DNA of 63,688 nucleotides, from sequence record MK250019.1; one strand, written 5' to 3'. Both the position numbers and the translations under genes were made by a program. The notes below the pieces were generated by a model, which saw nothing but the letters and a program-made list of their open reading frames with translations, ran no database searches and was not told where the DNA came from. Numbering within the stretch: the stretch's first letter is position 1; the number at the start of each line of letters is the position of its first letter. This document shows positions 15,672-33,053 of the stretch, in pieces.

Positions 15672-16355
15672 TTACTCTAATATTTTACATTCCTCTTCTG
15701 TATATCTCTTATGTAATTCAGTTAACCACCATTTTGTTTTAACTTTTACTTTAGGCATTCGTTGTCCCTTTAATAATGTTGATCGCCTAATTACTACACC
15801 TTCTTTTATATATGGATATTTACAATTAGTTTCAGTCCAATCATTATTTTGTATATCTTTAATAAAGTCATTAACTAATGGTCCTGTATAAACTAATTGT
15901 GGTAATTCAATACCACAATCTTTAAATAAATCCATATAAATTTTTGGTTCAATATATCCTTTCTTTTTTATAAATACATCAATTAATGCAAGATGCATAT
16001 TATCTTTATCTTCTAATGAATGAAATCCTGCGAAACTATGTTCTCCATACCATTCAAAGAAAAATGTAATTTCATCAACGTCAGAGAATACATCTTTCTT
16101 ACCTCTATGTTGTTCAACAATATTAGATAATATAGTTTCATAATTATGTGATTTAAAATAACGTACAGCATCACCAAATTGTTCAGATGACTCATCTACC
16201 ATACATTTTCTTGAACCAAAATTTGTGAACATCTTTTTCTTAACAGAATATTTTGCACAGAAATTTTGTCCATCTAATTTATTAAATGCCCATACTTGTT
16301 CACCTAGTAATTCAGTATTATATTTTATATTATCTATTGAATCGTAATGTTTCAT
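15672..16355 (-). CDS. ATP-dependent RNA ligase (Rnl-type adenylyltransferase domain)
   Basis: Motif I NKLDGQN, III FFEWYG, IV EGVVIR, V KVKVK. Confidence 0.75.
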   Translation of the reverse strand: MKHYDSIDNIKYNTELLGEQVWAFNKLDGQNFCAKYSVKKKMFTNFGSRKCMVDESSEQFGDAVRYFKSHNYETILSNIVEQHRGKKDVFSDVDEITFFFEWYGEHSFAGFHSLEDKDNMHLALIDVFIKKKGYIEPKIYMDLFKDCGIELPQLVYTGPLVNDFIKDIQNNDWTETNCKYPYIKEGVVIRRSTLLKGQRMPKVKVKTKWWLTELHKRYTEEECKILE

Positions 16356-17887: not shown

Positions 17888-17900
17888 TTATTAAAAATAA

Positions 17901-18575: not shown

Positions 18576-18604
18576 TTTATAGTATATTATAATCAAAAAG
18601 TTTA
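18576..18604 (-). promoter_or_regulatory. sigma70-like promoter TAAACT-N17-TATAAA
   Basis: Upstream of tRNA-Ser(GCT). Confidence 0.5.
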
Positions 18605-18614
18605 CTTTTTATCA

Positions 18615-19697: not shown

Positions 19698-19836
19698 AAT
19701 TCATTTTCTAAATTTTCTAATTTTATCTCTAACAACCTTATCCTGTTCTCTTGTGTTAAAATAATAGTTTTTAACTTATTAATAGAATCAATAATTTCAT
19801 TTATCTTATCATATAATTGCTTTTCTTGTTCATTAC

Positions 19837-20148
19837 TCATATTATTATCTTATCATTTAAAATATCATCAACTATATTAACTAATATAGGACAAACACAA
19901 TTATAATAATCAAAGTCTTTTTCAAAAGAAATATCATTATTAGAAAAATCCTTATATAATTGTAAAAGAATAAATGCAACATATTTATTAAATGGACGAT
20001 CAGTGATATTATATGATGAAATATTACGTAATATTTCATATACACTTTCTGCATCCATATAAGTATCCAACTCTTTTACGTATTTAACTATATTATTTTG
20101 AATCTGAATAATATAATTATTTATATTTGAATTATTTATAATTATCAT
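19837..20148 (-). CDS. Hypothetical protein
   Basis: 103-aa ORF. Confidence 0.5.
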   Translation of the reverse strand: MIIINNSNINNYIIQIQNNIVKYVKELDTYMDAESVYEILRNISSYNITDRPFNKYVAFILLQLYKDFSNNDISFEKDFDYYNCVCPILVNIVDDILNDKIII

Positions 20149-20153
20149 ATTTC

Positions 20154-20366
20154 TTACTCTTCAATAAATTTTTTAATTGTTTTTGCCATATCAATAATTC
20201 TATCAAATTCATATCGGTCTCTATTAGCCTTCTCTGAATTTGCCCAATACATTGTATAAATCAATGCACGATCAGCTGCAGGTAACTTACCAAAGTTATC
20301 GTCATTGATTAATTCATCAAATTTATTGTTCTTAAACTTAATATTTTTAGTTTCATTTGTATTCAT
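20154..20366 (-). CDS. Hypothetical protein
   Basis: 70-aa ORF in operon spacing. Confidence 0.5.
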   Translation of the reverse strand: MNTNETKNIKFKNNKFDELINDDNFGKLPAADRALIYTMYWANSEKANRDRYEFDRIIDMAKTIKKFIEE

Positions 20367-20388
20367 ATAATTTATATATCAATTTATA

Positions 20389-20601
20389 TTATTTGTTTTC
20401 ATTATTATTAATAACTTTAAACTTATCAGTATCAGGAATAATGGCTAAACTACCCCATGTTCCATGAAGCTGTCCAATACTATCGATAAATTGAACAACA
20501 CCTTCACGTCCAATATATGAGTTTACAACTGTATCATAACCACAATCATCAACCCATAAAATTTTAATAGTATCTCCTATCTTTACGTTTTCTTGTTCCA
20601 T
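20389..20601 (-). CDS. DUF4314-like small protein
   Basis: GVVQFIDSIGQLHGTWGSLAIIPDTDKF pattern. Confidence 0.6.
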   Translation of the reverse strand: MEQENVKIGDTIKILWVDDCGYDTVVNSYIGREGVVQFIDSIGQLHGTWGSLAIIPDTDKFKVINNNENK

Positions 20602-20624
20602 AACAAATCTTATTTAAACATTAT

Positions 20625-20656
20625 ATAACAAAGATACATATTTTATATTAAAAAAG
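20625..20656 (-). promoter_or_regulatory. Bacteroidota-type promoter
   Basis: CAAAGATA at 20629-20636. Confidence 0.6.
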
Positions 20657-20683
20657 AAAGGATACTAACTTAAATTAGTATCC

Positions 20684-21070
20684 TTAATATATTTTCCACT
20701 ATTCAAAATGATTTCTTGTATCTAAATAAAATAAATTAGTTTCATTCTTATATGCTTCCTGTTCAAATGATATATTTCTATATGCTTTATGCGAAAATCT
20801 ATCTTTTGTAAATAATACACGCCATAACCATTCAAAGAAATATATTATATAGAATATAATACCACCTATATACTATTGAAGACACAATGGTAAAAAACAT
20901 GCAAAATCTTTCATTTGTTCAGTATGTATAGACTCATGATTTAATATTTTTTCTTTATATCTAGGAATCTATAATTTATATGCATATTCTTTTCTGACAA
21001 ATAATGTACCGAAAAGATTAATAGCAATAAAACCCTATACAGGTATAATACTATTATAAACAATTTTCAT
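20684..21070 (-). CDS. HExxH-containing membrane-associated protein (128 aa, 4 TAG)
   Basis: MKIVYNSIIPV(Q)GFIAINLFG...NHESIH...AYRNISFEQEAY, a pattern typical of Bacteroidota and their phages. Absent from the ORF track. Confidence 0.7.
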
Positions 21071-21099
21071 TTTATTAACTTATTCTTTTAAGTATTTAT

Positions 21100-21834
21100 T
21101 TAATCATTATTAATACGTTCTGTTTTTAACTCAATAATTATATCTTCTTTTATAAATAAAACAGTATTATTATCAATATTTCTATATTCAATATTTTTAA
21201 TTACATTCACAAAATTATGAACAAAAGTATTTAATATAGATATATCTGTATCTTCTATTCTAAATATAAATTTAGATAATTCTGGATATGCTAATGATAT
21301 TTCTTTCTTTGTAAAATATTCATCTCCATTTATTAAACCTAAACATTGTCCAGATTGAAATGCAATTAATTTTAATATATCTTCTTTTGACATATTATTA
21401 TTTAATGTTGTGAAATCTATTGTTGTTAAATCAATATTTAATAATGTATTTAATCTACAATCAAAGTCACTACGTAATGCGAGTTTTACTTCTGATCTAT
21501 ATTGAGATCTAGGTAAATGAGATAAAATAGAACGTATAGAGCGTACTATCTTTAATGGTATATTGCGCTTTACATTTTTAGTAATTAATAAAGGAGTATT
21601 CTGATGATGTAAAGAATATGTATTTTTAATGGCATTATTTAATTCATCTTTTGTTCCTTTATAACAATTAGAAATAATACCATCATCAATAGTTATTAAA
21701 TTTCTATTTTCATTTTTATCAGATGAACAAAATATCTTACATTCATTTAATGACGGTAATTTATCTACAATATATGCTATGTCTATATCAGTTGAATCAG
21801 ATGAACCATATATATAATTTCCATATATTTCCAT
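21100..21834 (-). CDS. Pol-beta superfamily nucleotidyltransferase
   Basis: IYGSSDSTDIDIAYIV (GS-x-DxD). Confidence 0.6.
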   Translation of the reverse strand: MEIYGNYIYGSSDSTDIDIAYIVDKLPSLNECKIFCSSDKNENRNLITIDDGIISNCYKGTKDELNNAIKNTYSLHHQNTPLLITKNVKRNIPLKIVRSIRSILSHLPRSQYRSEVKLALRSDFDCRLNTLLNIDLTTIDFTTLNNNMSKEDILKLIAFQSGQCLGLINGDEYFTKKEISLAYPELSKFIFRIEDTDISILNTFVHNFVNVIKNIEYRNIDNNTVLFIKEDIIIELKTERINND

Positions 21835-21839
21835 TTTAA

Positions 21840-22106
21840 TTATTCTAAATTAATTTGCTTAAATATTAAATAATTCTCTAAATCTATAAGAGTCTGTAAC
21901 GATTCATCAAAGTATTGATGATCATAATTTTCATCATTTCTTGCATGCAAATCTATTAAAGCTTCATGAAATCTTGAATCAGGATATTTCTCAAAATATT
22001 TTTTCAAAATTTCCAAAATTTTCATATTACTTTCATAACGTTTACTTCTGTAATACTCAAACATCTTCTGCTCTGACTCATTTCTTTTTATATCATTCTC
22101 TACCAT
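21840..22106 (-). CDS. Hypothetical protein
   Basis: 88-aa ORF. Confidence 0.55.
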   Translation of the reverse strand: MVENDIKRNESEQKMFEYYRSKRYESNMKILEILKKYFEKYPDSRFHEALIDLHARNDENYDHQYFDESLQTLIDLENYLIFKQINLE

Positions 22107-22129
22107 AATTTATAAAATTAAATTAATAG

Positions 22130-22993
22130 TTATATACTTATATCTTTTATTTCTCTATCTAATGATATACATTTAGGATCTATATTTTCATATGTAAAAA
22201 CACTATTCTATCCTTTTGGATCATCAAAGAATCTATACATAGTTGCTTTATTTCCTTCAATATAAGAACCTCTTGTTTTTAAATCTATCTTTAATATTAC
22301 TGCATTATTTATATTTTGTTTATTCTTAAATAAATCTTTTGCATAACTTTCCAATTTATTATAATTATATTTTAAATAAAAATAAACTCTATCTGGATAA
22401 TTATCACCATTAAATTGCTTAGATCTCGGTATTAACCCATTTTTCTATATTTTCTAATATGTTTTATAATCAGTTATATGGTATAAAATACCATCACATT
22501 CCTTATATACATAATCAGTTAATTCATATATAAATTTTGGATGTAACATAAATACATAGTTATCATTCTATCGTTTTTTTACCGCAATAAAATATCCTAA
22601 ATTATAAATAATAGATTCTAGATTTATTAATGCATCTTTATTATATTCATCATCATAATCATCACAATATATATAAAAATATAATAATGGTGTTTTATCT
22701 TTCTATAATGGATTATAATCAATTCCAGCATGATGAATAAAACCATCAAAATATTTTTTTAGTTTAGATAATGCTTTATTCGGATCCATTGTATGTAATA
22801 AACCTTCATACAAATAATTTTGTTCACATTTTTTTAAGTAACTATATTGACATGTATCTTCTATACCATATTTTAGTTGATTATATGACTAAAACCATAT
22901 ATTATCTTTTGAATATTCTCTTAATGCATTATCATAATAATTAAATTTCATTTCATATAAGGTTTTGCCTATCAATCTATCATAACTATCCAT
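22130..22993 (-). CDS. ADP-ribosyltransferase-fold / Tpt1(KptA)-like protein (287 aa, 6 TAG)
   Basis: C-terminal LYHITD....KI(Q)KNGLIP...RVYFYL...VILKID...FFDDP....VFTYENIDP..I. Absent from the ORF track. Confidence 0.6.
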
Positions 22994-23132
22994 AAAATTA
23001 AATATTTATAAAAATTTAATTATTTATTACATTTATCGAATATATTGCAAACCTTACTAATAGTTTTCAAAAAATTATTAATAAAAAATAGGTTATGAAA
23101 TACGAGATTTCATAACCTATTAATACTTCATG

Positions 23133-23218
23133 CGGAAGCTGTAGGATTCGAACCTACGGGCCGTCTCCGGTCTCGGGTTTTCAAGACCCGCGCAATCGAC
23201 CAACTCTGCCAAACTTCC
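23133..23218 (-). tRNA. tRNA-Ser(TGA)
   Basis: Type II cloverleaf, CGGGT-CTTGAAA-ACCCG, G73. Confidence 0.93.
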
Positions 23219-23359
23219 AAATAAAAATTAGGATTTATATTCTGTGAGAATCCTTTAACTCAGTACCAATACGATGGTCTCCAAGACTTTCCATTAAATA
23301 AATTTAATGTTCTTGTAGTTACGATTCTATATCATAATAATATAGACTATTAATAATTG

Positions 23360-23430
23360 TTGCAACTAACGGAATCGAACCGCTTACTCTCTCGCATGAT
23401 GAGAATGTGTTGCCATTACACCAAGATGCA
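23360..23430 (-). tRNA. Atypical tRNA with CAT anticodon
   Basis: Cloverleaf with loop ATCATGC and a T-T mismatch in the acceptor. Confidence 0.6.
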
Positions 23431-23552
23431 TGCAGAGTTTTATCGATCGCTTATTATCTCTGTCATTCATATTTCCCCATTTATGATATTACTTTATAGA
23501 TACACAATCGCGAACAGTTATCTATATTCATAAAATAAACGTATCATACTAG

Positions 23553-23627
23553 TTGCGGAAGGGTGGGACTCGAACCCACGATCTTTTGCTTATGAGACAA
23601 ACGAGATACCAACTTCTCTACCCCGCG
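23553..23627 (-). tRNA. tRNA-Met(CAT), initiator-like acceptor
   Basis: CGCGGGG with C1xA72; 2-nt bulge in the acceptor; lacks the three G-C pairs in the anticodon stem. Confidence 0.75.
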
Positions 23628-23971
23628 ATATATAAAAACATAAAAATAATAATGAATTCATAGATGGATTCCTGACTACCATCAAACCTCATTACATATT
23701 AAGCACATTATTCAGTCACTACAAGTTAGTTCATGACGCTAACTTTTTATGTAGGAAGGATTGATTACCTTCAAAGGCTACAGACATCATTCCATTAAAA
23801 CGATTTGACCTTTCTTACGTCACTCACAGTTGGCCAACTGTGGTTATTTTAACCTTATGCTTCTTAATATTGATTACTCTAAATCATATCTTTTCAAATA
23901 TAACCTAAATGCCTTATTTGCTGTCCACAAATTATTCAGCAATATAAAAACATTATTAAGTTATGTTATTG

Positions 23972-24157
23972 AGCTCCGAGTCGGATTCGAACCAACGACC
24001 TGCTCATTGCTCTATGCTGAAGAAACGAACTTCAGATATTATAAATTTAATTCTCATTAAATTTTTGCATTAACCACTATGCTACATAGAGTTTAATTTT
24101 TTTCAATCTTTATTGATTGTAAACAAGTGAGCTGCACTACCACTGTGCTATCGGAGC
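23972..24157 (-). tRNA. tRNA-Thr(TGT) interrupted by a 114-nt intron (24009-24122)
   Basis: GCTCCGA/TCGGAGC acceptor; GCTCA-CT-TGT [intron] AA-TGAGC. The intron holds a tRNA mimic at 24009-24091. Confidence 0.85.
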
Positions 24158-24237
24158 ATAAATTTTATTAACTTATTATTTATCTAATTTACTTTAAAAA
24201 TTAATAATAAATCAAAAAAATATTTCATAATTATTTG

Positions 24238-24318
24238 TACCTTCACTCGGACTCGAACCGAGACGTAATTAAACCTAGCTCCTTAGGCTAGTGACTATAC
24301 CAATTCGTCTATGAAGGT
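24238..24318 (-). tRNA. tRNA-Leu(AAG)
   Basis: CTAGC-CTAAGGA-GCTAG, variable arm, A73. Confidence 0.85.
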
Positions 24319-24393
24319 ATTAAAATTAGTTTCATAAAGAAACTTTTTATTTAATAACGTAAATTTAAAATAATTTATTTTTAACTATTTTAG

Positions 24394-24467
24394 TAGTGCG
24401 TACCGGGATCGAACCGGTGAAATACCAGCGTGAAAAACTGGCGACTTAACCACTTGTCAAACGCACC
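24394..24467 (-). tRNA. tRNA-Glu(TTC)
   Basis: CCAGT-TTTTCAC-GCTGG. Confidence 0.9.
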
Positions 24468-24489
24468 AAATTTTTTTAAAATACATTAT

Positions 24490-24518
24490 ATTATATATAA
24501 CTTTTTAAATAAAGTCTA
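24490..24518 (-). promoter_or_regulatory. sigma70-like promoter TAGACT-N17-TATAAT
   Basis: Inside the tRNA array, upstream of tRNA-Glu. Confidence 0.6.
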
Positions 24519-24550
24519 TATATTTATTAAAAATATTTTCAAAATATTTG

Positions 24551-24654
24551 TGGGAACAACAGGATTCGAACACTGTGACGTAAGATCATTTCAACCGGTT
24601 TGTAAATACAACCCACTTACCATGGGTCTCTCACACCAACGAGAAGGTATTCCC
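24551..24654 (-). ncRNA. Degenerate tRNA-like RNA (GTA loop, long extra arm)
   Basis: GGGAATA/TGTTCCC acceptor, ACCCA-TGGTAAG-TGGGT, bulged T arm. Confidence 0.5.
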
Positions 24655-24659
24655 AAATA

Positions 24660-25310
24660 TTATAATTTATTTATATATTCCTTTAATTCTTTCGCTTTAT
24701 ATGGTAATTCATATTTTTTACACCATTTCTTTATAGCATTACCAGAAATACCATATAATCTTCCAATATTTTCAAATGTAATATATTTCCTAAATAATTC
24801 TATTAACTCTTCTTTTGAAGGAATAATATAATTTTTATTGGTTTTTATATTATCAGATATTTTATTATACTAACTAATTATAGAATTGTCTTTAAATTTA
24901 TATATTAAATTATTAACAGCATTATCATCTTTTATAATTTCTGTTGGACATTCTAGTAAATTACTATGTATTTCTCGATGGCAATTAGAACATACTAATA
25001 CACATTTATCTAATTCTGTTTTTACTTTATTCCAACTTCTAGTATAACCTCTACTTCCTATTGCAAAATCTTTCTATTCAGGATTAATATGATGAAATTC
25101 TAATGCTGAAATACATTTATTATAACCACAACATTGACATCTATTCCCTTTATATGCTAATGCTAATAGTTTTATATGATCTCTTCGTTTCTAAACATAT
25201 TCAGACTAACATTTCATGCATTTCCAATGAATTGAATTATCATAAAAATACTATTTAAATAAAGTATTCCCATGCTTTTTGCATATACGATATTCTTTTA
25301 TATCACTCAT
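24660..25310 (-). CDS. HNH homing endonuclease with C-terminal HTH (216 aa, 5 TAG)
   Basis: CQCCGY...LEFHHINPE(Q)KDF...KCVLVCSNCHREIH; starts 4 nt after tRNA-Asn. Confidence 0.85.
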
Positions 25311-25314
25311 ATTG

Positions 25315-25388
25315 CGCTTCGGAATGGACTCGAACCATTGACTTTCTGATTAACAGTCAGACGTTCTAACCAACTGAACTACCGAAGC
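25315..25388 (-). tRNA. tRNA-Asn(GTT)
   Basis: Canonical cloverleaf. Confidence 0.95.
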
Positions 25389-26056
25389 AAATATTGAATA
25401 GTTTATCTTCGGACACTATTCATAAATTATTAAAATTCAGTCATATACTTACCGAGAATTATATATGCACTATATCATGAAAGTTTATTCATAATGGCAC
25501 TACTTATCATGATTAAAACCATATTCAACTTTGGTAACTAATATTCATATAGGAAAAATATCTTACCATCTCATCTTAAATATATGGTTGAATAACATAT
25601 ATTCATAATTATTTTTTAGAACCTATATTAAAATCAAAAAAATGCATATCATTATTATAAGAAATAATTAAAACTTATAATAAAGTCTCGAGCTATGCGC
25701 AATATCTTTATAAAAAATGTAAATATAAAACAGATAATATTGAATAACAAATTCTTTTTATAACTGTTTCATTATTTAAATCTACATCTTTTGTCCTATC
25801 TCTCTATATATGTAAATCATAAAGAAGATTATGTGAACGCCATTCATTTATTAAACTATACATACTTCTTTTATGAATTATATAACTATTATCACATCTC
25901 TATTTAATACTATTAATAACATATTTCATGTTCTTAATAGATTTTATTTGGTAACTATCAATAATACATATATTATCTTTACTAATAATTACTTCTGGAT
26001 TAATCATAAATATATTTTTAACTATTTCATATATTTATTCATAATCAACATTATTG

Positions 26057-26129
26057 TGACTCTGGTAAGATTCAAACTTACGACTCACTCCTTAGAAGGG
26101 AGTTGCTCTATTCACTGAGCTACAGAGCC
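26057..26129 (-). tRNA. tRNA-Arg(TCT)
   Basis: ACTCC-CTTCTAA-GGAGT. Confidence 0.92.
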
Positions 26130-26160
26130 AAATAACAACATAGATATGTTAAATAAGTTG

Positions 26161-26234
26161 CGGTACGTACGAGATTCGAACTCGTGACTTCTACAGTGAC
26201 AGTGTAGCGCTCTGACCAACTGAACTAACGCACC
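26161..26234 (-). tRNA. tRNA-Asp(GTC)
   Basis: CTACA-CTGTCAC-TGTAG, G73. Confidence 0.95.
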
Positions 26235-26464
26235 AAATTAAAAAACAGAAGTCATTTATATATTAAGTATTTGAGTTATTAAATATATTCCAAAAATATA
26301 TTAATCACTTTGTAAACATTATTATAAAAATAAGTTTGCTGTATTGACTTCCATATTCATAAACAAATCTCATTAAACACTTACATTTCTTACTAATAAA
26401 AGTCTCATCGTAAGTCAAATACTTCAATTATTATTTATGAATTATTATATTATTTAAATTTGTG

Positions 26465-26539
26465 TGGGCCCAGTAGGACTTGAACCTACGACCTTCAGAT
26501 TATGAGTCTGCTGCTGCTAACCGTCTGAGCTATAGGCCC
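26465..26539 (-). tRNA. tRNA with CAT anticodon, Ile2-like (or elongator Met)
   Basis: GGGCCTA/TGGGCCC acceptor resembles bacterial Ile2. Confidence 0.85.
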
Positions 26540-26606
26540 AAATAATATATTTTTATATTATGTAATTAAAATATCTATATTATTAATATTAAAATTTAAT
26601 TTATAG

Positions 26607-26679
26607 TGTTCCGTACGAGACTCGAACTCGTTACCCCGATATTAAAAGTATCGTGCTCTGCCAGATGAGCTAACGGAAC
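26607..26679 (-). tRNA. tRNA-Lys(TTT)
   Basis: CGATA-CTTTTAA-TATCG. Confidence 0.92.
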
Positions 26680-26689
26680 CGCATATTAA

Positions 26690-27508
26690 TTACATAACCT
26701 AATATAATTTATCTAATCGTTCATTATATCTCCAAAATTGACAATGTAATTTATTTATAATATTATTCTAACGAATTATATCTTTATCTGATAAAATATT
26801 ATTATATACATCTTTATAATGTTTAGGTTCATCATATTCAAATACAATATTTTTTTCTTTATCATATCCATCAAGAAAATAACCTAAAATCTCACATTCA
26901 CCGCCATTTCCGTAATACTATAAATTCCAGTTATTTTCTTTATTTAATTTTTCTATATATTCTCCAGAATTTTTATTAAATCGTGGATTGTGAAATCCTT
27001 TATTCTTTTTCAAATATTCAATTGCACCTAATCGCTATTTATATTTATGATCTTCTGTATGATGTGTACCTAAATTATAGGGTATATTTTTACCAGACAT
27101 ATAATTCTATCTAATTGTAATTGATTGCTATTTTACGCTATCACTTGTTTTTATAGTTAAACCTTTATTCCATGCAATATGTCCTTTTGTTGCTCCATTA
27201 TTGCCATGATGTATTTCTCTATTAGGATTCATATGACAATATCTTTCATGATATTTTATACCATAAATTGAATATAAATTATTACAAAACTAACAATTAA
27301 CTTTCTAACAATTAATTTTCTTTATCTTAAAATCTTTCTATTTAAACTATAAATCAATATTATATTTTTCAACTATTATTTTTAAATAATTTATATTTCC
27401 TGAATTCTAATAACAATTTAACTATCGCAAACAATCATTATATGATGTACAATTATTTAATTTCTAAATAATTTCATTATCACTAATCTATTTAATATTA
27501 TTTTTCAT
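26690..27508 (-). CDS. Vsr/EDxHD-like PD-(D/E)XK homing endonuclease (272 aa, >10 TAG)
   Basis: AWNKGL and HHTEDHK NUMOD-like segments; GYFLDGYDKEKNIVFEYDEPKHY. Absent from the ORF track. Confidence 0.75.
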
Positions 27509-27533
27509 GTTTTCAAAGAACTAAATACATAAT

Positions 27534-27562
27534 ATTATATGTAAAACTTAAAATAAAGTCTA
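27534..27562 (-). promoter_or_regulatory. sigma70-like promoter TAGACT-N17-TATAAT
   Basis: Upstream of the 27508 endonuclease. Confidence 0.6.
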
Positions 27563-27593
27563 TTTTTAATAGATTATTTTTTAAATTATTTTG

Positions 27594-27667
27594 TTGGGTG
27601 GGTGAGACTTGAACTCACGACCTCTTGCTTATCAGGCAAGCTATCTAACCAGCTGATATACCACCCA
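27594..27667 (-). tRNA. tRNA-Ile(GAT)
   Basis: CTTGC-CTGATAA-GCAAG. Confidence 0.92.
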
Positions 27668-27673
27668 AAATTA

Positions 27674-27934
27674 AAACAAGTAGATTTACGAGACACAGCT
27701 TCTTCACCCTTTATAAAGGAAACTCGCTATTAGGCACTTGCGCTGTTTTACGAAGTTGTTGTGTGTCAACTTATGGCTTCTCACGAAATTTGCTGCTCTT
27801 CACATCTATGATCGAAATCAAACCAATTCTTTTCAATAATTGACCTGTAACCCTTATCAGTTCTTCAGTATATAACATAAGCTAGCATTACTATACACTT
27901 ACTCATTATTATAATCAGAAGTCTATACTTGTTT
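27674..27934 (-). ncRNA. Candidate structured ncRNA closed by a terminal stem
   Basis: AAACAAGTA...TACTTGTTT ends; GC-enriched and non-coding; lies between two tRNAs. Confidence 0.4.
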
Positions 27935-27939
27935 TTTAG

Positions 27940-28022
27940 TAGAGATAAAGGGACTCGAACCCTTACACTTTAACAGTATATGCTCCTAAGGCATACGTGG
28001 CTACCAATTACACCATATCTCT
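27940..28022 (-). tRNA. tRNA-Leu(TAG)
   Basis: TATGC-CTTAGGA-GCATA, variable arm. Confidence 0.92.
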
Positions 28023-28028
28023 AAAATG

Positions 28029-28182
28029 TGGACCCTCGTGGAATCGAACCACGACCTCTGGATTGTCTCTATAAATGGAATCGAACCATTAATAATAACC
28101 ATTAATATTATAGAGATTGATTTAATACAGTTTACTCTGTTAATTCAGTCCAGCGTACAGGCACCAGCCATACGCAAGGTCC
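28029..28182 (-). tRNA. tRNA-Phe(GAA) interrupted by a 79-nt intron (28065-28143)
   Basis: GGACCTT/AGGGTCC; CTGGA-CT-GAA [intron] AA-TCCAG. The intron holds a minimal tRNA mimic at 28065-28116. Confidence 0.85.
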
Positions 28183-28191
28183 ATTTATGTG

Positions 28192-28271
28192 TTGCGGGTC
28201 TTAGAGTCGCACTAAGTATCGCATAGCTTATGAGACTAGCATGATTTATATATCTGTTTCACCCCCCCGCA
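28192..28271 (-). tRNA. Atypical tRNA with CAT anticodon
   Basis: GCGGG/CCCGC acceptor, loop CTCATAA, T loop TGCGACT, enlarged D loop. Confidence 0.55.
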
Positions 28272-28443
28272 ATATTATATTATTATTTTTTAAATAGGCC
28301 ATTTTCACTGGTTATATTTAAACTATTCCATTGTCCTCAGCTATCTAACGTTCTTTTTCTTTCTAACCCAAATGATTAATTTTAAGGTAATTACGCTATT
28401 TAATAGCGTCACTGAGAGTTGTTTAGAACCTATACTTTATTTG

Positions 28444-28510
28444 TCAGATTTAGAGATTCGAACTCCTTAGACTTATTCCCGCGCGTCCTATTCGTCAATC
28501 TACCCATCTG
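28444..28510 (-). ncRNA. tRNA-like remnant
   Basis: CAGAT/ATCTG ends and a TTCGAAT loop; other arms are weak. Confidence 0.3.
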
Positions 28511-28549
28511 TAGAAATACAGTTCCCACACTGTAAGTCACCTGTAATTG

Positions 28550-28620
28550 TTGGACTAGTAGGACTCGAACCTACTCAAATAGCGTCAAAGGCTATTGTGC
28601 TGCCATTACACCATAGTCCA
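28550..28620 (-). tRNA. tRNA-Gln(TTG)
   Basis: ATAGC-CTTTGAC-GCTAT. Confidence 0.93.
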
Positions 28621-28637
28621 GTATTTATATCACATAG

Positions 28638-28874
28638 CGGTTGTAATTGGATTCGAACCAATAATCTACCCACGACCTTGGGTCATTCTACGAGTAAACG
28701 ATAATTTTTTTATTCATTATAAGCAAATAATTATAAAATCAATAACGGTATAAGAGCTTAAGATTAATACCATTCGATCCGCAAACATCTCATATTAATT
28801 ATTATAATATTCGAAATAAATATTCATTTTAATTACCAGTTTTAACTACTCCACCTGTTTTGAACTATACAACC
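28638..28874 (-). ncRNA. tRNA-framed RNA with about 170 nt inserted in the D loop
   Basis: GGTTGTA/TACAACC-G acceptor, GTTC...GAAT D stem, ACCCA-AGGTCG-TGGGT, ATTGG-TTCGAAT-CCAAT. Confidence 0.55.
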
Positions 28875-28897
28875 ATATTATTAAAAATAGACGTTCC

Positions 28898-28975
28898 TAT
28901 CTGATTTGCACAGCACCCTATACCATAATGATATAGATTCTAACTATTAAACTATCAGAACATTAAATATACTTA
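28898..28975 (-). pseudogene. Degenerate tRNA-like sequence
   Basis: GTTCT/GGAAC ends, CTATA/TATAG stem, TGCAAAT loop. Confidence 0.3.
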
Positions 28976-29014
28976 ATAACTAGTATATAAAAATATATCC
29001 TCTATTTTTATTTC

Positions 29015-29425
29015 TTAATTTGATGGATGATAATAATCTTTCCAATTATTAAATGTATTCTTTATTGATAAATTTTGTAAATATTCAACAGAATAACATT
29101 TATTAGTATGTATTATTCTATGATGATTTGGACATACAATAATTAAATTTGAAACATCATCAGTTCCACCATTACATTTCTCAATTATATGATGAATATC
29201 ACATGTTGATTCATTCCAACCACATATTGCACAACCTATTTTAGAACGATTTAAAATCTTTGATATTGTTCTTTTTGAACAATCTAATATAGAATTTATT
29301 TCTTGTTCTTTTGAATGTTTTCTATGTTGTTTACATTCATCACATCTTATATATCTATCTTTACGGATTGTCTTATTAGTTAAAAAAGATTTTCCACATA
29401 TTTCACATATATACTAATATTCCAT
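29015..29425 (-). CDS. HNH endonuclease (136 aa, TAG at codon 4)
   Basis: CAICGW...CDIHHIIEKCNGGTDDVSNLIIVCPNHHRIIH; directly after tRNA-Tyr. Confidence 0.85.
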
Positions 29426-29432
29426 AATAATG

Positions 29433-29515
29433 TGGGTGAGGCAGGACTCGAACCTGCGAAGTCAAATGACAGCTGATTTACAGTCAGCCCCCTTTGCCGC
29501 TCGGGACACTCACCC
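29433..29515 (-). tRNA. tRNA-Tyr(GTA), canonical type II
   Basis: GCTGA-CTGTAAA-TCAGC, long variable arm, A73. Confidence 0.95.
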
Positions 29516-29850
29516 AAAATTAATGAAATATTTCGAAGAAATTGCATCTTCTAATAATCTTACAGCTTACCCTTTAGGTTTTTTAATAGCTTGCCTGTTA
29601 CTTCACAGGAACAAAATATTTCATTAAAAATTACCCGAAACATTCATTGTCGTCACAGTCACATCTATAGGATTTAAAAATAGATTCTAACCAGGAAGAG
29701 TTTGCTCTACATCATCAGATTTATTTTATATTTAGACTTAATAATAAACCCTACATACTTACCATATAACTCTTTTATTTAATAGTCATATAAATACACT
29801 GTCTAATAATATAAGTATACAACTATTACTGTAATGTTTCGCACAAGACG

Positions 29851-29924
29851 TGGAGGTATGGAGACTCGAACCCCAGACACCCTGCGTGCAAAGCAGGTGC
29901 TCTAGCCAACTGAGCTATACCCCC
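29851..29924 (-). tRNA. tRNA-Ala(TGC)
   Basis: G3:U70; CCTGC-TTTGCAC-GCAGG. Confidence 0.95.
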
Positions 29925-29996
29925 AATATTTCTCTGTTTTAAGAGTAATATTTATATTTGAAAAACATTATATTGCCTATTCAAATAATAAAAAAT

Positions 29997-30227
29997 TGTT
30001 CACATAGGCGGATTCGAACACACCTTCTTAGATTTCATTGTGCCATTCCAATTTCATTCTTCACCTACTCTGGACATCAAGACCTTTTCTTTTGGCTTCT
30101 ATCGGACACATTATTTTTATAATCAAATAATGGAGGTCCTGCACTTTTATTCGCATTTCAACTTCACTACTCTCTTCTTTTACCTCCATCAGCATTCAGT
30201 TTTACCATAGCTAAACTATATGTGAAC
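29997..30227 (-). ncRNA. tRNA-framed 231-nt RNA with a large insert replacing the anticodon arm
   Basis: GTTCACATA/TATGTGAAC acceptor, D arm AGTTT/AAACT, TTCGAAT T loop, internal helix ATGGAGGT/ACCTCCAT. Confidence 0.65.
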
Positions 30228-30233
30228 ACATGG

Positions 30234-30293
30234 TAGGTTATGAGGAACTCGAATCCCCGTACTAATAAGTTATTAGTATCCAAAATATAACCT
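30234..30293 (-). ncRNA. Minimal tRNA-like RNA
   Basis: AGGTTAT/ATAACCT, one internal hairpin, GGGGA-TTCGAGT-TCCTC. Confidence 0.45.
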
Positions 30294-31228
30294 TATAAAG
30301 TATTAATATCAACTTCTTTATGTTCTAATATTAATTTAATATTATAACCTAATTTTTTATATTCATAAAATTTATCTTTAATTTCTTGCAGATTTAATGT
30401 ATAGTTTGATTTTATTTCTATAATAGTATTTGTTGATGGTAAATAAAAATCAGGAATTGCAATTCTATATATTTTCTTTATTGAATCAAAATATTTTATA
30501 TGTAAATTTTCAACTTCATATAAAATTTTCTATTCATCTAATTTTTTTGCATAATCCTGTTCATATGAACTTCTCAAATATACATTTTTATTATCCCATG
30601 TTTTATACCAACCTGCTTTATATATTGATTTATTGAAAATATTACTATGATCTAATCTACCTGTTAATACAGCATTTTGTGTAAACATCTCTGGTTCAGA
30701 ACGTGTAGGAATATTTAAATATTTAAATATTTTCTATGTTAAATTATGCCCATTTTTATAACCATACATTTCTGCAATCTATAAACCTGACATTTTTTTA
30801 TTCCAATATAAATCGTATAATTTCTATCTAATTATATTAAATTCATTTTCAACATCAATAGTTCCTAATTTATTTTTATCAAACCCAAAATATTTTATTA
30901 ATGTATTAAACTACTTATAGTTATGTATTTGACAAAAAGGATTCTAACATTGTTTTTGATATTTGTAATACGTTCGTCCACAAATTTTACATTTACACTA
31001 ATTTTGGGGTAATGTCTATTTACATGACATACATAAACATTCTTTTTTTGATAATCTTTTATTAACATAAATAAGTTTTCCACATATATTACATATCGTT
31101 TCCTTTTGCTAATTATTATCATCATTTTTAGTTGAAAATGATCTTGCGCATTTTGAACAACAAAAACGACCACTTCCATATGTTCCATCATGTTCTTTTC
31201 CACAATTTTCACAAATCATAGTATACAT
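30293..31228 (-). CDS. Zn-finger plus TnsA-like PD-(D/E)XK homing endonuclease (311 aa, multiple TAG)
   Basis: CENCGKEHDGTYGSGRFCCSKC; LRSSYEQDYAKKLDE...PDFYLPSTNTIIEIKS. Confidence 0.8.
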
Positions 31229-31637
31229 AATTCTTTATTATATTTATCTACACTTATAATAGAAATAGTTCAAATTTTATAAAAAATAGTATACTGCTTT
31301 CCCAAGTGGTATACTATGAAATAATTCACAAATCCGATTTTATGAATTTAAAAATTAAATAGTTAATTAGGGTGGATTTGCACTTCCCTTACTCCATAGC
31401 TAAATGTTAATGATGGACCCTTCTTACTAATGAATAAAAGAAAATTGCGCAAGTTTTTATTCATTAATATGTTTAGTTCTACATAACGTAGTTCTCTACT
31501 TACCGTTAAACTTCGTTACTATTTAATTAAAAACGTTTAAAAATATATTCAGAAATTTAATATATATTCGCCTCGACGATACTATCTGAACATAGAAGGT
31601 ACATCCTTTATACATACTAAATCATATTTTTAAATTG

Positions 31638-31801
31638 CGGGAATAGAGGGAATCGAACCCACGCCCAGAGATTAGCTACATAAATTGGATTCGAACCAAT
31701 TAAACTTTATAAAGTATGATACCCAACAGCATTATGTAGTTTAATTTAATCAGGTTGTTTCCTGTATACAGTCTCTTGCTCGACCTTCGAGCTATATTCC
31801 C
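31638..31801 (-). tRNA. tRNA-Tyr(GTA)-like, short variable loop, interrupted by a 93-nt intron (31674-31766)
   Basis: GGGAATA/TATTCCC-G; AGAGA-CT-GTA [intron] AA-TCTCT. The intron holds a tRNA mimic at 31675-31739. Confidence 0.8.
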
Positions 31802-31805
31802 AACT

Positions 31806-31995
31806 TTTGCATTAAGGTCAGCAAACCACACATCTCGCCGTCATATAAGCATCCACGATTACTATCGTTCCATGTATACAACCAATCATGCCTGTGCGAC
31901 TATTTGTTCTATTCGGCTCGTGGCGATATTCTTTTCGAAAGCAATAGCAAATATTAAAAGGACTTTAATATTCTATAATATCGCCTGATGCACTT
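31806..31995 (-). ncRNA. Candidate structured ncRNA
   Basis: GC-enriched; TGCAT terminal stem and GGCGATATT/AATATCGCC helix. Confidence 0.4.
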
Positions 31996-32247
31996 TGGAC
32001 AAGCAGTATAATATAAGAAATCTTATATATAGCCTGATATATTTCAATCATATTTTTCTTTGGCAGCATCATTCTATAAATTCATATAATTATTGTTTTC
32101 TTCTTCACATAAGTAAAATACTTATGAAGTTACTTTTCAATAAAGTTCATAGTATATCTGATTAACTTTTCAGTAACAGAAACATTTATTATATGAATAA
32201 CATTTATATTTGTCTATCAAAATTTCAAAGAACAATATATTTTTTAA

Positions 32248-32400
32248 TTAACAATACAAAGATACATCTTTATTTTGAATTAAAAAAATATTCATTGAAA
32301 TTTTTGAAATATTTTTTTGTTTATTATCAATATGTCAAAGAACTAAATGTTTGTTATTTTATTAACAACACAAAGATACATAATATATTTCAAATAAAAA
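32248..32400 (-). promoter_or_regulatory. Tandem Bacteroidota-type promoters
   Basis: CAAAGATA at 32257-32264 and 32371-32378, pointing into the tRNA array. Confidence 0.6.
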
Positions 32401-32426
32401 AATAAGTCTATAAAAAATTGATATTT

Positions 32427-32675
32427 TTATTTAAGTTTTATAATTGTATCTTCTTTAATAGAACGTCTAATCCATCTCATTAGAATTATTGCTCTATCAT
32501 AATGTGGTAAGAATGAAGCAGTTTCACCTACATCATGTTTATCTGATAAATCGATTTCAAACTGATATACATGATTATCAGTTGATGTAATATTATAAAC
32601 TGCAATTCCTCCAGCATTCATACAAACAAGGTCTGCTGCACCTTTAACTAAAATTTTTAAATCAATGTTTTCCAT
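32427..32675 (-). CDS. Conserved phage hypothetical protein
   Basis: 82 aa ending ILMRWIRRSI. Confidence 0.65.
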   Translation of the reverse strand: MENIDLKILVKGAADLVCMNAGGIAVYNITSTDNHVYQFEIDLSDKHDVGETASFLPHYDRAIILMRWIRRSIKEDTIIKLK

Positions 32676-32699
32676 TTTTAATTAATTTTCTTTTTTTAG

Positions 32700-32772
32700 T
32701 TGGGGTGGTGGGAGTTGAACCCACTACCAGAATTTTATAAGAATTCCACTCTAACCGTTGAGTTACACCCCA
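32700..32772 (-). tRNA. tRNA-Ile(TAT)
   Basis: GAATT-CTTATAA-AATTC. Confidence 0.85.
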
Positions 32773-32962
32773 ATATGGGATGTTCCTAAATATAATACAA
32801 CATTATATCATTAAACATATAGGAACATAATTTCTATTGTTAATCCTATATATAATAATGTATATAAGATCAACAATTATAATATTCGATGCTTATGTAT
32901 ATGTCGTATTAAATTTGTCATAACTTTATTCTTATAAAATTTGTTTGTATTCTTTTAATTTG

Positions 32963-33053
32963 CACACAGAGAAGGATTCGAACCCTCGAACAGACTGTTA
33001 AATCCGTTATTGGTTTTGGAGACCAACTGCATCAACCACTCGCACATCTGTGT
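32963..33053 (-). tRNA. Serine-type tRNA body with CCA (Trp) anticodon
   Basis: TTGGT-CTCCAAA-ACCAA, about 7-bp variable arm, G73. Confidence 0.8.

What the first reader, a model, noticed from the sequence alone, without database searches (positions are those of the whole stretch)
23972..31801. Three tRNA genes carry anticodon-loop introns built around nested non-decoding tRNA mimics
Seen: tRNA-Thr(TGT), -Phe(GAA) and -Tyr(GTA) are each split at the same register, directly after the anticodon and before AA (positions 37-38). The three introns (114, 79, 93 nt) differ in sequence but share one design. They begin T(T)A(A)CA with a 4-5 bp hairpin (CAATC/GATTG, ACAG/CTGT, CAGG/CCTG), then an AT linker containing TTAAA, then a tRNA mimic. 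Each mimic has an 8-bp acceptor on a 5-bp T stem with a TTCG loop, no real anticodon, and a C discriminator abutting or within 1 nt of the 3' exon. Established: the introns are too short for group I introns; RNase P and 3' tRNA nucleases recognise the acceptor/T elbow; 8/5 is the bacterial tRNA-Sec geometry. Inference: the mimic recruits tRNA-end-processing nucleases to excise the intron and a ligase joins the halves, which would be a new tRNA splicing route or a timing or anti-anticodon-nuclease device. I recall intron-containing tRNAs being noted in Lak phage annotations, but I do not know of this shared architecture being described.
Basis: partly seen in the sequence, partly recalled or inferred. 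Interest (0 to 1): 0.95.

Follow-up and report, generated by a model that had tools for sequence, protein, structure and literature searches.

The report
tRNA-shaped introns inside megaphage tRNA genes
Three tRNA genes of the gut megaphage Lak-A2 are interrupted in the anticodon loop by short related inserts that each carry a stripped-down tRNA ending exactly at the 3' splice site, which suggests (but does not prove) that ordinary tRNA-trimming enzymes plus a phage RNA ligase remove them.

Summary
The window is Prevotella phage Lak-A2 (100% identity to MK250019.1). The three interrupted tRNA genes are real. The introns are 24009-24122, 28065-28143 and 31675-31767 on the minus strand.

That these introns exist, and that the Thr intron nests a tRNA, was published by Devoto et al. 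2019, who called them "enigmatic". The shared architecture is not described there or in the later papers I found.

I confirm and extend that architecture with 18 sequence-distinct copies from Lak-like phages, in tRNAs with eight anticodons. Each intron has:
- a WTA(C)A start,
- a 3-6 bp hairpin with an A-rich loop,
- an A-rich linker,
- an acceptor/D/T "top half", usually without an anticodon arm,
- a 13-bp acceptor+T stack in all 12 copies measured, and a final C in all 18.

Covariation strongly supports the stems.

One correction: the "Tyr(GTA)" gene is most likely Asn(GTT), split one base earlier.

One addition: 59 of 62 ordinary tRNA genes in these phages also have C right after the discriminator. 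The intron's last base therefore sits where a normal phage tRNA has C74.

The introns have no BHB motif and match no group I or ribozyme family. The phage encodes no EndA, RtcB, RNase Z-fold protein, RNase E/G, RNase P RNA or RT. It does encode several ATP-type RNA ligases.

Splicing itself is not shown, and the 5' cut is unexplained.

The parts
23972..24157 (-). tRNA-Thr(TGT) gene. 5' exon 24123-24157, intron 24009-24122, 3' exon 23972-24008. C74 is at 23971.
   Evidence: Lak-C1 carries the same exons joined without the intron. The in-silico spliced product is called tRNA-Thr(tgt) by ARAGORN. G1-C72 and C2-G71 are present and there is no G3:U70, so it is not Ala (read from the sequence).
24009..24122 (-). 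Thr intron, 114 nt. TTA lead, hairpin 24104-24119 (CAATC / AATAAA / GATTG), linker 24092-24103, tRNA-like module 24009-24091 ending in C.
   Evidence: R1 gives 57.5 bits, E 1.5e-7. The nested module is called tRNA by ARAGORN and by Rfam at 30.4 bits. Contigs in runs X9 and X14 skip exactly these 114 nt.
28029..28182 (-). tRNA-Phe(GAA) gene with an unusually long D loop. 5' exon 28144-28182, intron 28065-28143, 3' exon 28029-28064. C74 is at 28028.
   Evidence: The intron-less ortholog in Lak-B8 is called tRNA-Phe(gaa). Between Lak-A2 and Lak-B1 the exon T stem changes with compensation, CGTGG/CCACG to TGTGG/CCACA.
28065..28143 (-). Phe intron, 79 nt. TTA lead, hairpin 28127-28140 (ACAG / AGTAAA / CTGT), linker 28117-28126, arm-less tRNA-like module 28065-28116 ending in C.
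   Evidence: R1 gives 70.6 bits. An 800-nt contig in run X14 is collinear with 27666-28550 and skips exactly these 79 nt. Between A2 and B1 the mimic T stem changes from AATGG/CCATT to ATTAG/CTAAT.
31638..31801 (-). tRNA annotated as Tyr(GTA), re-read here as tRNA-Asn(GTT). 5' exon 31768-31801, intron 31675-31767, 3' exon 31638-31674. C74 is at 31637.
   Evidence: The syntenic Lak-B1 gene is intron-less Asn(GTT), 79% identical and also 71 nt. The gene has G73 and a 4-nt variable loop.
31675..31767 (-). Asn intron, 93 nt. ATA lead, hairpin 31751-31764 (CAGG / AAACAA / CCTG), linker 31740-31750, tRNA-like module 31675-31739 ending in C.
   Evidence: R1 gives 82.7 bits. A 97%-identical but longer copy sits in a different Asn(GTT) paralog in Lak-B1 and Lak-B8.
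15672..16355 (-). 227-aa RNA-ligase-family ORF consisting of the nucleotidyltransferase domain only. Candidate sealing enzyme.
   Evidence: PF09414 at 35.1 bits against a cut-off of 27. PHROG 548 'RNA ligase' at E 1e-13. Motifs KLDG, EWYGE, EGVV and KVKTK are present. The genome has three further PF09414 hits above the cut-off, one of them interrupted by stop codons.
24660..25310 (-). Free-standing HNH endonuclease ORF between tRNA genes, with 5 in-frame TAG codons read as Gln under code 15. Possible driver of intron presence/absence polymorphism.
   Evidence: PHROG 2255 HNH at E 1e-33. ORF listed.
29015..29425 (-). Second free-standing HNH endonuclease ORF in the tRNA array.
   Evidence: PF01844 at 26.3 bits. 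Several HNH PHROGs match.

Best explanation
These are members of one family of small mobile introns, which I call 'pre-tRNA cassette' introns, found in Lak-type megaphage tRNA genes.

**Anatomy.** Each intron has two modules:
- a 5' module: WUA(C)A, then a 3-6 bp hairpin with an A-rich loop, then an A-rich linker;
- a 3' module that is a tRNA reduced to the parts end-processing enzymes read. These are the acceptor helix extended by a -1:73 pair, a D arm with GG in its loop, a T arm with a UUCGANU loop, and a single unpaired C.

**Proposed mechanism**
1. In the precursor, both the exons and the mimic fold as L-shapes.
2. The host nuclease that removes 3' trailers from all the CCA-less phage tRNAs (RNase Z type) cuts after the mimic's C. 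This frees the 3' exon with a 5' phosphate, exactly at nucleotide 37 (or 36 in Asn).
3. RNase P cuts at the mimic's 5' end.
4. A further endonucleolytic cut at N|WUA just before the hairpin exposes a 3'-OH on the 5' exon. The enzyme is not identified. A host RNase E/G-type enzyme or a phage enzyme are candidates.
5. One of the phage's ATP-dependent RNA ligases seals the nicked anticodon loop.

**Shown:** the anatomy, its conservation and covariation, the boundaries, mobility between tRNA genes, the absence of the known intron machineries, and the presence of ligases.

**Inferred:** every enzymatic step, and that splicing occurs at all.
For: **Family and structure**
- The family comprises 18 sequence-distinct copies, in tRNAs with eight anticodons: Thr, Phe, Asn, Gly, Arg, Pro, Tyr and Lys.
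- In 21 distinct aligned rows, 94.8% of cells in the 13 acceptor/T pairs are paired, against 64.5% in shuffles. 12 of 13 pairs show double changes. The covariation score is 0.873 against 0.256, with 0 of 500 shuffles reaching it. Slid controls give 31-45% paired (the smaller set is).
- The acceptor+T stack is 13 bp in all 12 copies measured. The last base is C in all 18.
- A GG-containing D-like hairpin is visible in every copy.

**Link to the phage's own tRNA ends**
- In 62 ordinary tRNA genes of these phages, position 74 is C in 59 and position 75 is A in 43.
- None has a full CCA.
- The -1 base can pair with base 73 in 48.
- The mimic plus the first exon base therefore reproduces the end of a normal phage pre-tRNA.

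**Exons stay functional**
- Removing WTA...C gives a canonical tRNA in 15 of the 17 copies tested. The two failures are the odd-D-loop Phe genes, whose intron-less ortholog is called Phe.
- Exon helices change with compensation between A2 and B1.
- The published Lak tRNA table lists one Thr row and no Phe row. The interrupted genes therefore appear to be the only phage copies of Thr(TGT) and Phe(GAA).

**Enzymes**
- The phage lacks EndA, RtcB, RNase Z-fold proteins, RNase E/G and RNase P RNA. The same searches hit a Bacteroides control genome for the last four.
- The phage has four PF09414 ligase-like hits above the cut-off, one interrupted by stop codons, and a CCA-adding enzyme.
Against: - There is no direct evidence of a spliced RNA, a free mimic, or the chemistry of the ends. 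The one read-laying run gave assemblies only.
- RNase Z normally cuts after base 73. If the paired G is counted as 73, a canonical cut would leave the C on the 3' exon.
- The 5' cut has no assigned enzyme, and the hairpin's role is unknown.
- One related intron, in Trp(CCA) of a distant Lak-like contig, has the same 5' module but no T arm. The mimic may therefore not be indispensable.
- The ligase gene is present in all 18 searchable more distant Lak-like contigs, but the model found tRNA-nested introns in only two of them.
Confidence: 0.42

Rival explanations
1. The inserts are selfish insertions that are never spliced. A tRNA cassette landed in other tRNA genes and inactivated them, and the mimics are decaying tRNA genes.
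For: No spliced RNA was seen. The original paper's tRNA scan classed these genes as pseudo-tRNAs. Presence/absence polymorphism is common. Free-standing HNH endonucleases lie among the tRNA genes.
Against: Decay should erase the pairing, but the stems covary. The 5' module, the 13-bp stack and the terminal C are kept across diverged lineages. Exons keep their cloverleaf with compensatory changes. Six sequence-distinct Asn(GTT) genes, of at least five exon types, carry the intron at the identical site. The anticodon arm is lost while the enzyme-recognition parts are kept.
Confidence: 0.15
2. A dedicated, so far unrecognised phage endonuclease makes both cuts. It uses the tRNA-like elbow and the 5' hairpin as handles, and a phage ligase seals the break. 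Host RNase P and RNase Z play no part in the exon cuts.
For: Both intron ends are defined by intron features, not by tRNA position: the split is at 35|36 in Asn and 36|37 elsewhere. The conserved WUA(C)A, hexaloop and linker sequences look like protein-binding sites. Many Lak ORFs near the array have no known family.
Against: No candidate was found. The terminal C matches the C74 of ordinary tRNA genes, which is most simply explained by the shared end-processing enzyme.
Confidence: 0.18
3. The intron is a new small self-cleaving or self-splicing RNA built on a tRNA-like scaffold. The host RtcB would join the products if the ends are cyclic phosphate and 5'-OH.
For: Several A-rich single-stranded segments are conserved and could make tertiary contacts. 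A Bacteroides control genome has RtcB.
Against: No ribozyme or group I family matches, even at E up to 1. The last base is C, not G. The conserved parts are exactly the protein-enzyme recognition elements of tRNAs. The core is very short.
Confidence: 0.08
4. Archaeal/eukaryal-type splicing at a bulge-helix-bulge (BHB) motif by an EndA-like endonuclease.
For: Anticodon-loop position and short length only.
Against: None of the 17 copies tested can form the 4-bp central helix; they score 0-3 of 4 pairs with no flanking helices. PF01974 has no hit in the phage although it hits four archaeal controls. The split is at 36|37 or 35|36, not 37|38.
Confidence: 0.02
5. The released mimic is itself the useful product, for example a decoy for tRNA-targeting host defences or tRNA-binding factors, and the host tRNA serves as its expression vehicle. 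This is compatible with any splicing route.
For: The elbow and acceptor are kept under selection. Similar arm-less tRNA-like genes also stand free in the genome, for example at 11103-11171. Abundant tRNA-flanked RNAs occur in the array.
Against: There is no evidence that the mimic accumulates. One related intron lacks the mimic. The mimic bodies differ widely between copies.
Confidence: 0.1

Closest known systems
Lak phage 'enigmatic' tRNA introns (Devoto et al. 2019, Nat Microbiol, PMC6784885)
   Same: These are the same objects. Table S6 of that paper lists the Tyr(GTA), Phe(GAA), Thr(TGT) and Gly(TCC) introns of Lak-A1/A2. It notes that the Thr intron contains an Rfam tRNA and that Lak-C1 lacks it.
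   Different: The paper gives no shared architecture, no mechanism and no family. It used tRNAscan's eukaryote-mode boundaries, which it noted are off by one for Thr, and called the third gene Tyr. This report adds the two-module design, the 13-bp/C rule, covariation, the Asn re-assignment, the C74 link, further host tRNAs, and exclusion of the known intron types.
Archaeal/eukaryal BHB tRNA introns (EndA/Sen endonuclease plus RtcB or Trl1 ligase)
   Same: Short, protein-spliced (as proposed here) introns beside the anticodon. Some archaeal tRNA introns also encode a functional small RNA.
   Different: There is no BHB motif, no EndA and no RtcB in the phage. The position differs, and the intron carries a tRNA-like domain.
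Bacterial and phage group I introns in tRNA anticodon loops (e.g. cyanobacterial tRNA-Leu(UAA))
   Same: A bacterial-world intron in the anticodon loop that is mobile between genes.
   Different: These are 79-141 nt, against more than about 200 nt for group I. There is no Rfam group I hit, the terminal base is C rather than G, and no conserved U.G pair at the 5' site.
tRNA-like processing signals: mitochondrial tRNA punctuation and the MALAT1 mascRNA
   Same: A tRNA-shaped element embedded in a longer RNA, whose job is to attract RNase P and RNase Z so that the flanking RNA ends are defined (established knowledge).
   Different: Here the element would define a splice site inside another tRNA, and the flanks would need to be rejoined.
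Phage T4 tRNA repair (Pnkp plus Rnl1 after PrrC cleavage) and T4 Rnl2
   Same: A phage-encoded ATP-dependent RNA ligase sealing a break in a tRNA anticodon loop. The Lak-A1 genes published in Table S7 include a T4 Rnl2 homolog, and Lak-A2 has PF09414 hits.
   Different: In T4 the break is made by a host defence nuclease. Here it would be a programmed step of intron removal.
Bacterial tRNA-Sec (8/5) and tRNA-His (G-1:C73)
   Same: A 13-bp acceptor+T stack.
   Different: The mimic has no UCA anticodon and no Sec-type long variable arm. The extra pair matches the -1:73 pairing possible in 48 of 62 ordinary Lak pre-tRNAs.

Membership tests
BHB (archaeal/eukaryal) tRNA intron | Two 3-nt bulges around a 4-bp helix that carry both splice sites | tested here: not met
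   The central helix has 0-3 of 4 pairs in all 17 copies tested, and there are no outer helices.
BHB (archaeal/eukaryal) tRNA intron | A splicing endonuclease of the EndA/Sen family is available | tested here: not met
   PF01974 has no match in the 541-kb Lak-A2 record, while the control search hits 4 archaea. The Prevotella host was not searched.
Group I intron | Conserved catalytic core (P3-P9), terminal G, and a U.G pair at the 5' site | tested here: not met
   No Rfam group I hit at the gathering threshold or at E up to 1. The last base is C in 18 of 18 copies, the last exon base varies, and the length is 79-141 nt.
Small self-cleaving ribozymes (hammerhead, twister, hatchet, pistol, HDV-like) | Match to the family's covariance model | tested here: not met
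   None is listed at E up to 1 over the searched loci holding the Phe (A2), Gly, Arg, Pro, Tyr and L110 Asn introns. None reaches the gathering threshold anywhere in the window, which also covers the Thr and Asn introns.
tRNA (Rfam RF00005), tested on the nested module | Cloverleaf scoring at or above 29 bits | tested here: inconclusive
   The Thr mimic scores 30.4 bits and the Arg-intron mimic 31.9 bits. The Phe and Asn mimics do not reach the threshold because the anticodon arm is missing. They are tRNA-derived but not tRNAs.
tRNA-like end-processing signal (RNase P / RNase Z substrate) | Coaxial acceptor+T helix, T loop, D-loop GG for the elbow, and an unpaired base after the helix | tested here: met
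   A 13-bp stack in the 12 copies measured, a TTCGNNT loop, GG in the D-like loop, and a terminal C, with covariation.
tRNA-like end-processing signal (RNase P / RNase Z substrate) | Actual cleavage by RNase P and RNase Z at the helix ends | not testable with these tools
   This needs enzyme assays or end-mapping of RNA from infected cells.
Bacterial tRNA-Sec | 8/5 stack plus a UCA anticodon and a long variable arm | tested here: not met
   The stack length is met. There is no UCA anticodon and no Sec-type arm (read from the sequences).
ATP-dependent RNA ligase (PF09414, Rnl2-like), tested on ORF 15672-16355 | Family profile above the cut-off and nucleotidyltransferase motifs I, III, IV and V | tested here: met
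   35.1 bits against a cut-off of 27. KLDG, EWYGE, EGVV and KVKTK are present. No solved relative is found by sequence. Activity and substrate are untested.
Spliced intron (any kind) | An exon-exon RNA from a template that carries the intron | tested here: inconclusive
   Joined forms occur in RNA-labelled runs. One has unrelated flanks and the other is an 800-nt contig of a different Lak strain. Only assemblies were available, with no matched DNA.

The most novel reading that the evidence does not exclude
A third route of tRNA splicing, distinct from self-splicing and from BHB/EndA splicing. The intron carries its own miniature pre-tRNA, so the cell's universal tRNA end-processing nucleases cut it out, and a phage RNA ligase rejoins the anticodon loop. 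The intron would be a complete 'processing unit' running from base 75 of one tRNA to C74 of the next. It could therefore spread at the RNA level, by ligation into broken anticodon loops.
Probability: 0.3. Interest if true: 0.9.

Novelty: new variant of a known kind. Interest (0 to 1): 0.72.

Why it matters
If these introns are removed by RNase Z/P-type cuts plus ligation, they would be the first tRNA introns in the bacterial world that are neither self-splicing nor BHB-dependent. They would show that a tRNA shape can serve as a portable splice-site marker.

This would also explain a published puzzle, the "enigmatic" Lak introns. It would change the annotation of megaphage tRNA sets, with Asn rather than Tyr and with the Phe and Thr genes counted as functional. 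It would give a function to the several RNA ligases of these phages. It could also provide a compact, enzyme-borrowed excision module for RNA engineering.

The universal C74 of Lak tRNA genes points to an unusual 3'-end maturation rule in this phage-host pair. That rule is testable on its own.

Tried and rejected
1. **ARAGORN's intron-mode placements** (Ala(AGC), Ser(GCT)). Rejected by the intron-less alleles and by identity elements. Its 'Thr(CGT) with a 143-nt intron' at 11103-11332 is two adjacent tRNA-like genes read as one.
2. **BHB motif.** Absent.
3. **Group I introns and ribozymes.** No Rfam match.
4. **A group-I-like guide pairing** between the hairpin's 5' strand and exon bases 32-35. 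It fits Thr, Asn, Phe and Tyr but fails for Gly, Arg and Pro. The same hairpin type also occurs with different exons. I dropped it as a general rule.
5. **Similarity between the intron's first 8 nt and the mimic's 3' strand.** It is exact in one Tyr intron (L109) and partial in the Phe introns, but not general.
6. **The 5' module elsewhere in the window.** It occurs only inside the introns.
7. **Phage-encoded EndA, RtcB, RNase Z fold, RNase E/G, RNase P RNA and reverse transcriptase.** None found.
8. **Expression and splicing from public RNA runs.**
   - The single read-laying run returned assemblies only.
   - The Thr-less joint lies in contigs with unrelated flanks.
   - The Phe-less joint lies in a contig of a divergent Lak strain.
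   - Intron-containing Phe contigs occur in three other runs.
   - So this shows nothing either way.
9. **Whole-genome file and relatives search.** Not available for this virus.
10. **Literature.** Searches for later mechanistic work on these introns found none.

Full report
**Identity of the window.** Bases 23900-32000 are 100% identical to Prevotella phage Lak-A2 (MK250019.1). They are 99.1-99.6% identical to Lak-A1 and Lak-C1, and about 84% identical over 38-39% of the query to the baboon B-Lak genomes. All tRNA genes of the array lie on the minus strand.

**What was already known.** Devoto et al. [quoted passage not shown]
- Their Table S6 lists introns in Tyr(GTA), Phe(GAA) and Thr(TGT) of Lak-A1 and Lak-A2, and in Gly(TCC) of Lak-A2.
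- It notes that Rfam finds a tRNA inside the Thr intron, that Lak-C1 lacks that intron, and that the true boundary is one base off the tRNAscan call.
- They call the introns enigmatic and give no architecture or mechanism.
- I found no later paper that does.
- So the existence of the introns is not new. The shared design is.

**Checking the observation.** The three genes and their parts are at the coordinates given under 'parts'.
- The Thr boundary is fixed by Lak-C1, where the same exons are contiguous. The Phe boundary is fixed by Lak-B8.
- Contigs in public runs skip exactly 24009-24122 and 28065-28143, with no positional ambiguity.

**The third gene is probably Asn, not Tyr.**
- In Lak-B1 the gene at the same place in the same gene order (Trp, Ile/Asn, X, Val) is an intron-less tRNA-Asn(GTT). 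It is also 71 nt long and 79% identical to the joined exons of the window gene. Other tRNAs of the window are 56-64% identical.
- The gene has G73 and a 4-nt variable loop. A normal long-arm Tyr(GTA) gene lies at 29432-29515.
- If the ancestral loop was CTGTTAA, the insert can only be ATACAGG...GTAGC (31675-31767). The final C then abuts the 3' exon, as in the other introns.
- Five further sequence-distinct Asn(GTT) copies, in at least four other exon backgrounds (Lak-B1 and four metagenome or IMG/VR contigs), have CTGT|ATA...C|TAA in the same way.

**A family, not three oddities.**
- I built a covariance model (R1) from eight copies. It finds exactly four strong members in the Lak-A2 genome: the three in the window and the Gly(TCC) intron.
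- It also finds members in IMG/VR and metagenome contigs of Lak-like phages.
- With manual inspection this gives 18 sequence-distinct copies. They interrupt Thr(TGT), Phe(GAA), Asn(GTT), Gly(TCC), Arg(CCT), Pro(TGG), true type-II Tyr(GTA) and Lys(TTT).
- All 18 begin ATA or TTA, usually followed by CA, and all end in C.
- All 17 copies scanned have a short hairpin with an A-rich loop, typically ARTAAA, followed by an A-rich linker, typically AAAWYAAA.
- The acceptor+T stack is 13 bp in the 12 copies measured.
- Every mimic keeps a small hairpin with GG in its loop where the D arm would be. The anticodon arm is usually gone.
- Removing WTA...C yields a canonical tRNA in 15 of the 17 copies tested.

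**Covariation.** On 21 distinct aligned rows the 13 acceptor and T pairs behave as follows (the 11-row set agrees).
- 94.8% of cells are paired, against 64.5% in shuffles and 31-45% when the partner is slid.
- 12 of 13 pairs have changes on both sides.
- The covariation score is 0.873 against 0.256. None of 500 shuffles reaches it.
- The alignment was fitted to the model, which favours the structure, and three rows are tRNA-plus-leader or unexamined weak hits. The effect is nonetheless large.
- Between Lak-A2 and Lak-B1 the Phe mimic's T stem changes from AATGG/CCATT to ATTAG/CTAAT. The exon T stem also changes with compensation.
- The 5' hairpin is too short to be significant in any single copy. 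It sits in the same place in nearly all copies, with at least seven different complementary stems.

**Mobility.**
- The same intron, 97% identical, sits in one Asn paralog in the A/C lineage and in a different Asn paralog in the B lineage.
- The Thr intron is present in A1 and A2 and absent in C1. The Phe intron is present in B1 and absent in B8.
- Near-identical 5' modules occur in the Gly, Arg and Asn introns with different mimics.
- HNH endonuclease ORFs lie between the tRNA genes. They could drive gain and loss at orthologous sites.
- No reverse transcriptase is encoded.

**The link to ordinary tRNA ends.** None of 62 ordinary tRNA genes in seven Lak or Lak-like loci encodes a full CCA. 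Even so (window genes):
- position 74 is C in 59 of them;
- position 75 is A in 43;
- position -1 is T in 47;
- the -1 base could pair with base 73 in 48.

In a genome of about 26% G+C this cannot be chance. The mimic reproduces this precursor geometry: helix, one extra terminal pair, an unpaired C, and then A, T or G. In the mimic that next base is the first base of the 3' exon.

The simplest reading is that the 3' splice site is the site at which all phage tRNAs lose their trailers. Conservation of C74 suggests that this C is kept, so that the cut falls after it. That would make the cut coincide with the splice site. This is inference. A canonical RNase Z cut after base 73 would leave one C too many.

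**Exclusions.**
- No copy can form a bulge-helix-bulge motif.
- No group I, group II or small-ribozyme family matches, even at lenient thresholds.
- The Lak-A2 genome has no EndA, RtcB, RNase Z-fold protein, RNase E/G, RNase P RNA or reverse transcriptase. The same searches hit a Bacteroides control for all of these except EndA.
- The genome has four PF09414 ligase-like hits above the cut-off, one of them interrupted by stop codons. One is the window's ORF 15672-16355, which has all the nucleotidyltransferase motifs.
- The published Lak-A1 gene table (Table S7) lists a T4 Rnl2 homolog and a CCA-adding enzyme.
- ATP-dependent ligases need 3'-OH and 5'-phosphate ends. By established knowledge, those are the ends left by RNase P, RNase Z and RNase E.

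**What remains open.**
- Splicing is not shown.
- RNase P plus RNase Z would free the mimic and the 3' exon but leave the lead, hairpin and linker on the 5' exon. A precise cut at N|WUA is required.
- U at +2 in all 17 copies tabulated loosely resembles the RNase E rule, but I have no test for it.
- A Trp(CCA) intron in a distant Lak-like contig has the same 5' module but no T arm. This warns that the 5' module may be the more basic part.
- The ligase gene is present in all 18 searchable more distant Lak-like contigs, but the model found tRNA-nested introns in only two of them. It is therefore not a dedicated splicing factor.

**Public RNA data.** Of the RNA-labelled runs that hold this region, I laid four from different studies. 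All are kept as assemblies.
- The Thr-skipping contigs continue into unrelated sequence on both sides, so they come from another genome.
- The Phe-skipping contig is 800 nt long and collinear with the window, but it has 30 differences on one side, so it is another Lak strain.
- Intron-containing Phe contigs with no differences occur in two of three other runs; the third has 26.
- None of this distinguishes splicing from intron-less genotypes.

**Verdict.** It extends to a conserved, covarying, mobile intron family. It does not belong to any known intron class. It is incomplete for the 5' site and untested throughout.

Noticed in passing
window 17968-33053 (all ordinary tRNA genes); also loci L002, L061, L079, L080, L109: Ordinary tRNA genes of Lak and Lak-like phages almost always have C right after the discriminator (59 of 62) and usually A after that (43 of 62). 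None has a full CCA. The -1 base is T in 47 of 62. This suggests an unusual 3'-end maturation rule (cut after C74?) or a strong RNase P determinant.
   Followed up: partly
window 11103-11171 (-) and 11219-11335 (-): Two free-standing tRNA-like genes with over-long acceptor helices (8-9 bp). The first has no anticodon arm (Rfam tRNA 32 bits; R1 28.6 and 25 bits). ARAGORN's intron mode fuses them into a false 'Thr(CGT) with a 143-nt intron'.
   Followed up: partly
window 30000-30240 (-): A stretch of about 235 nt bounded by a 9-bp tRNA-type acceptor pairing (GTTCACATA / TATGTGAAC), with a T-arm-like element at its 3' end. It could be a tmRNA-like RNA or a tRNA with a very large insert. There is no ARAGORN or Rfam match. 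A sub-threshold permuted-tmRNA hit exists in a Lak-like contig (L110 1033-1241).
   Followed up: partly
window 24549-24655 (-): A tRNA-like gene (acceptor GGGAATA / TGTTCCC, good T arm) with a GTA-containing loop and an insert of about 30 nt in the variable region. It is not called by ARAGORN or Rfam.
   Followed up: no
window 28440-28548 (-) and 28640-28703 (-): tRNA fragments or remnants flanking tRNA-Gln(TTG): a T arm at 28463, and a partial tRNA match of 24.7 bits at 28644-28703. The Gln trailer begins with a TTACAG...CTGTA hairpin that recalls the intron 5' module.
   Followed up: no
window 27670-27844 and 29500-29856: In the pig run X12 these intergenic stretches have assembly depths of 13,000-33,000, against roughly 750-1,500 for most neighbouring bins. 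They abut tRNA-Ile and tRNA-Ala. These look like abundant RNAs released by tRNA processing. The first is not unusually structured (z +1.7) and has no Rfam match.
   Followed up: partly
L109 159-297 (-); L109 2013-2135 (-) and 2833-2952 (-): A more distant Lak-like phage holds other intron types. One is a Trp(CCA) intron that starts ATACAGGG plus a hairpin but has no T-arm mimic. The other two tRNAs carry a different insert that shares CACGTAAAT...AATCAWACAGCAACGTT.
   Followed up: no
window 24660-25310, 26690-27508, 29015-29425, 30293-31228 (all -): HNH or other endonuclease-like ORFs are interspersed among the tRNA genes. Most have many in-frame TAG codons (1-14), read as Gln under the published code 15.
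   Followed up: partly
MK250019.1 166932-167561, 213377-213730, 361427-362128, 220590-221150 (outside the window): Lak-A2 carries several further RNA/DNA-ligase-family (PF09414) hits besides the window's ORF. One of them is riddled with stop codons.
   Followed up: no
L188 5533-5647 (+): A Tyr(GTA) intron whose mimic still looks like a nearly complete long-arm (type II) tRNA. This suggests that different mimics derive from, or are replaced by, different tRNA types.
   Followed up: no
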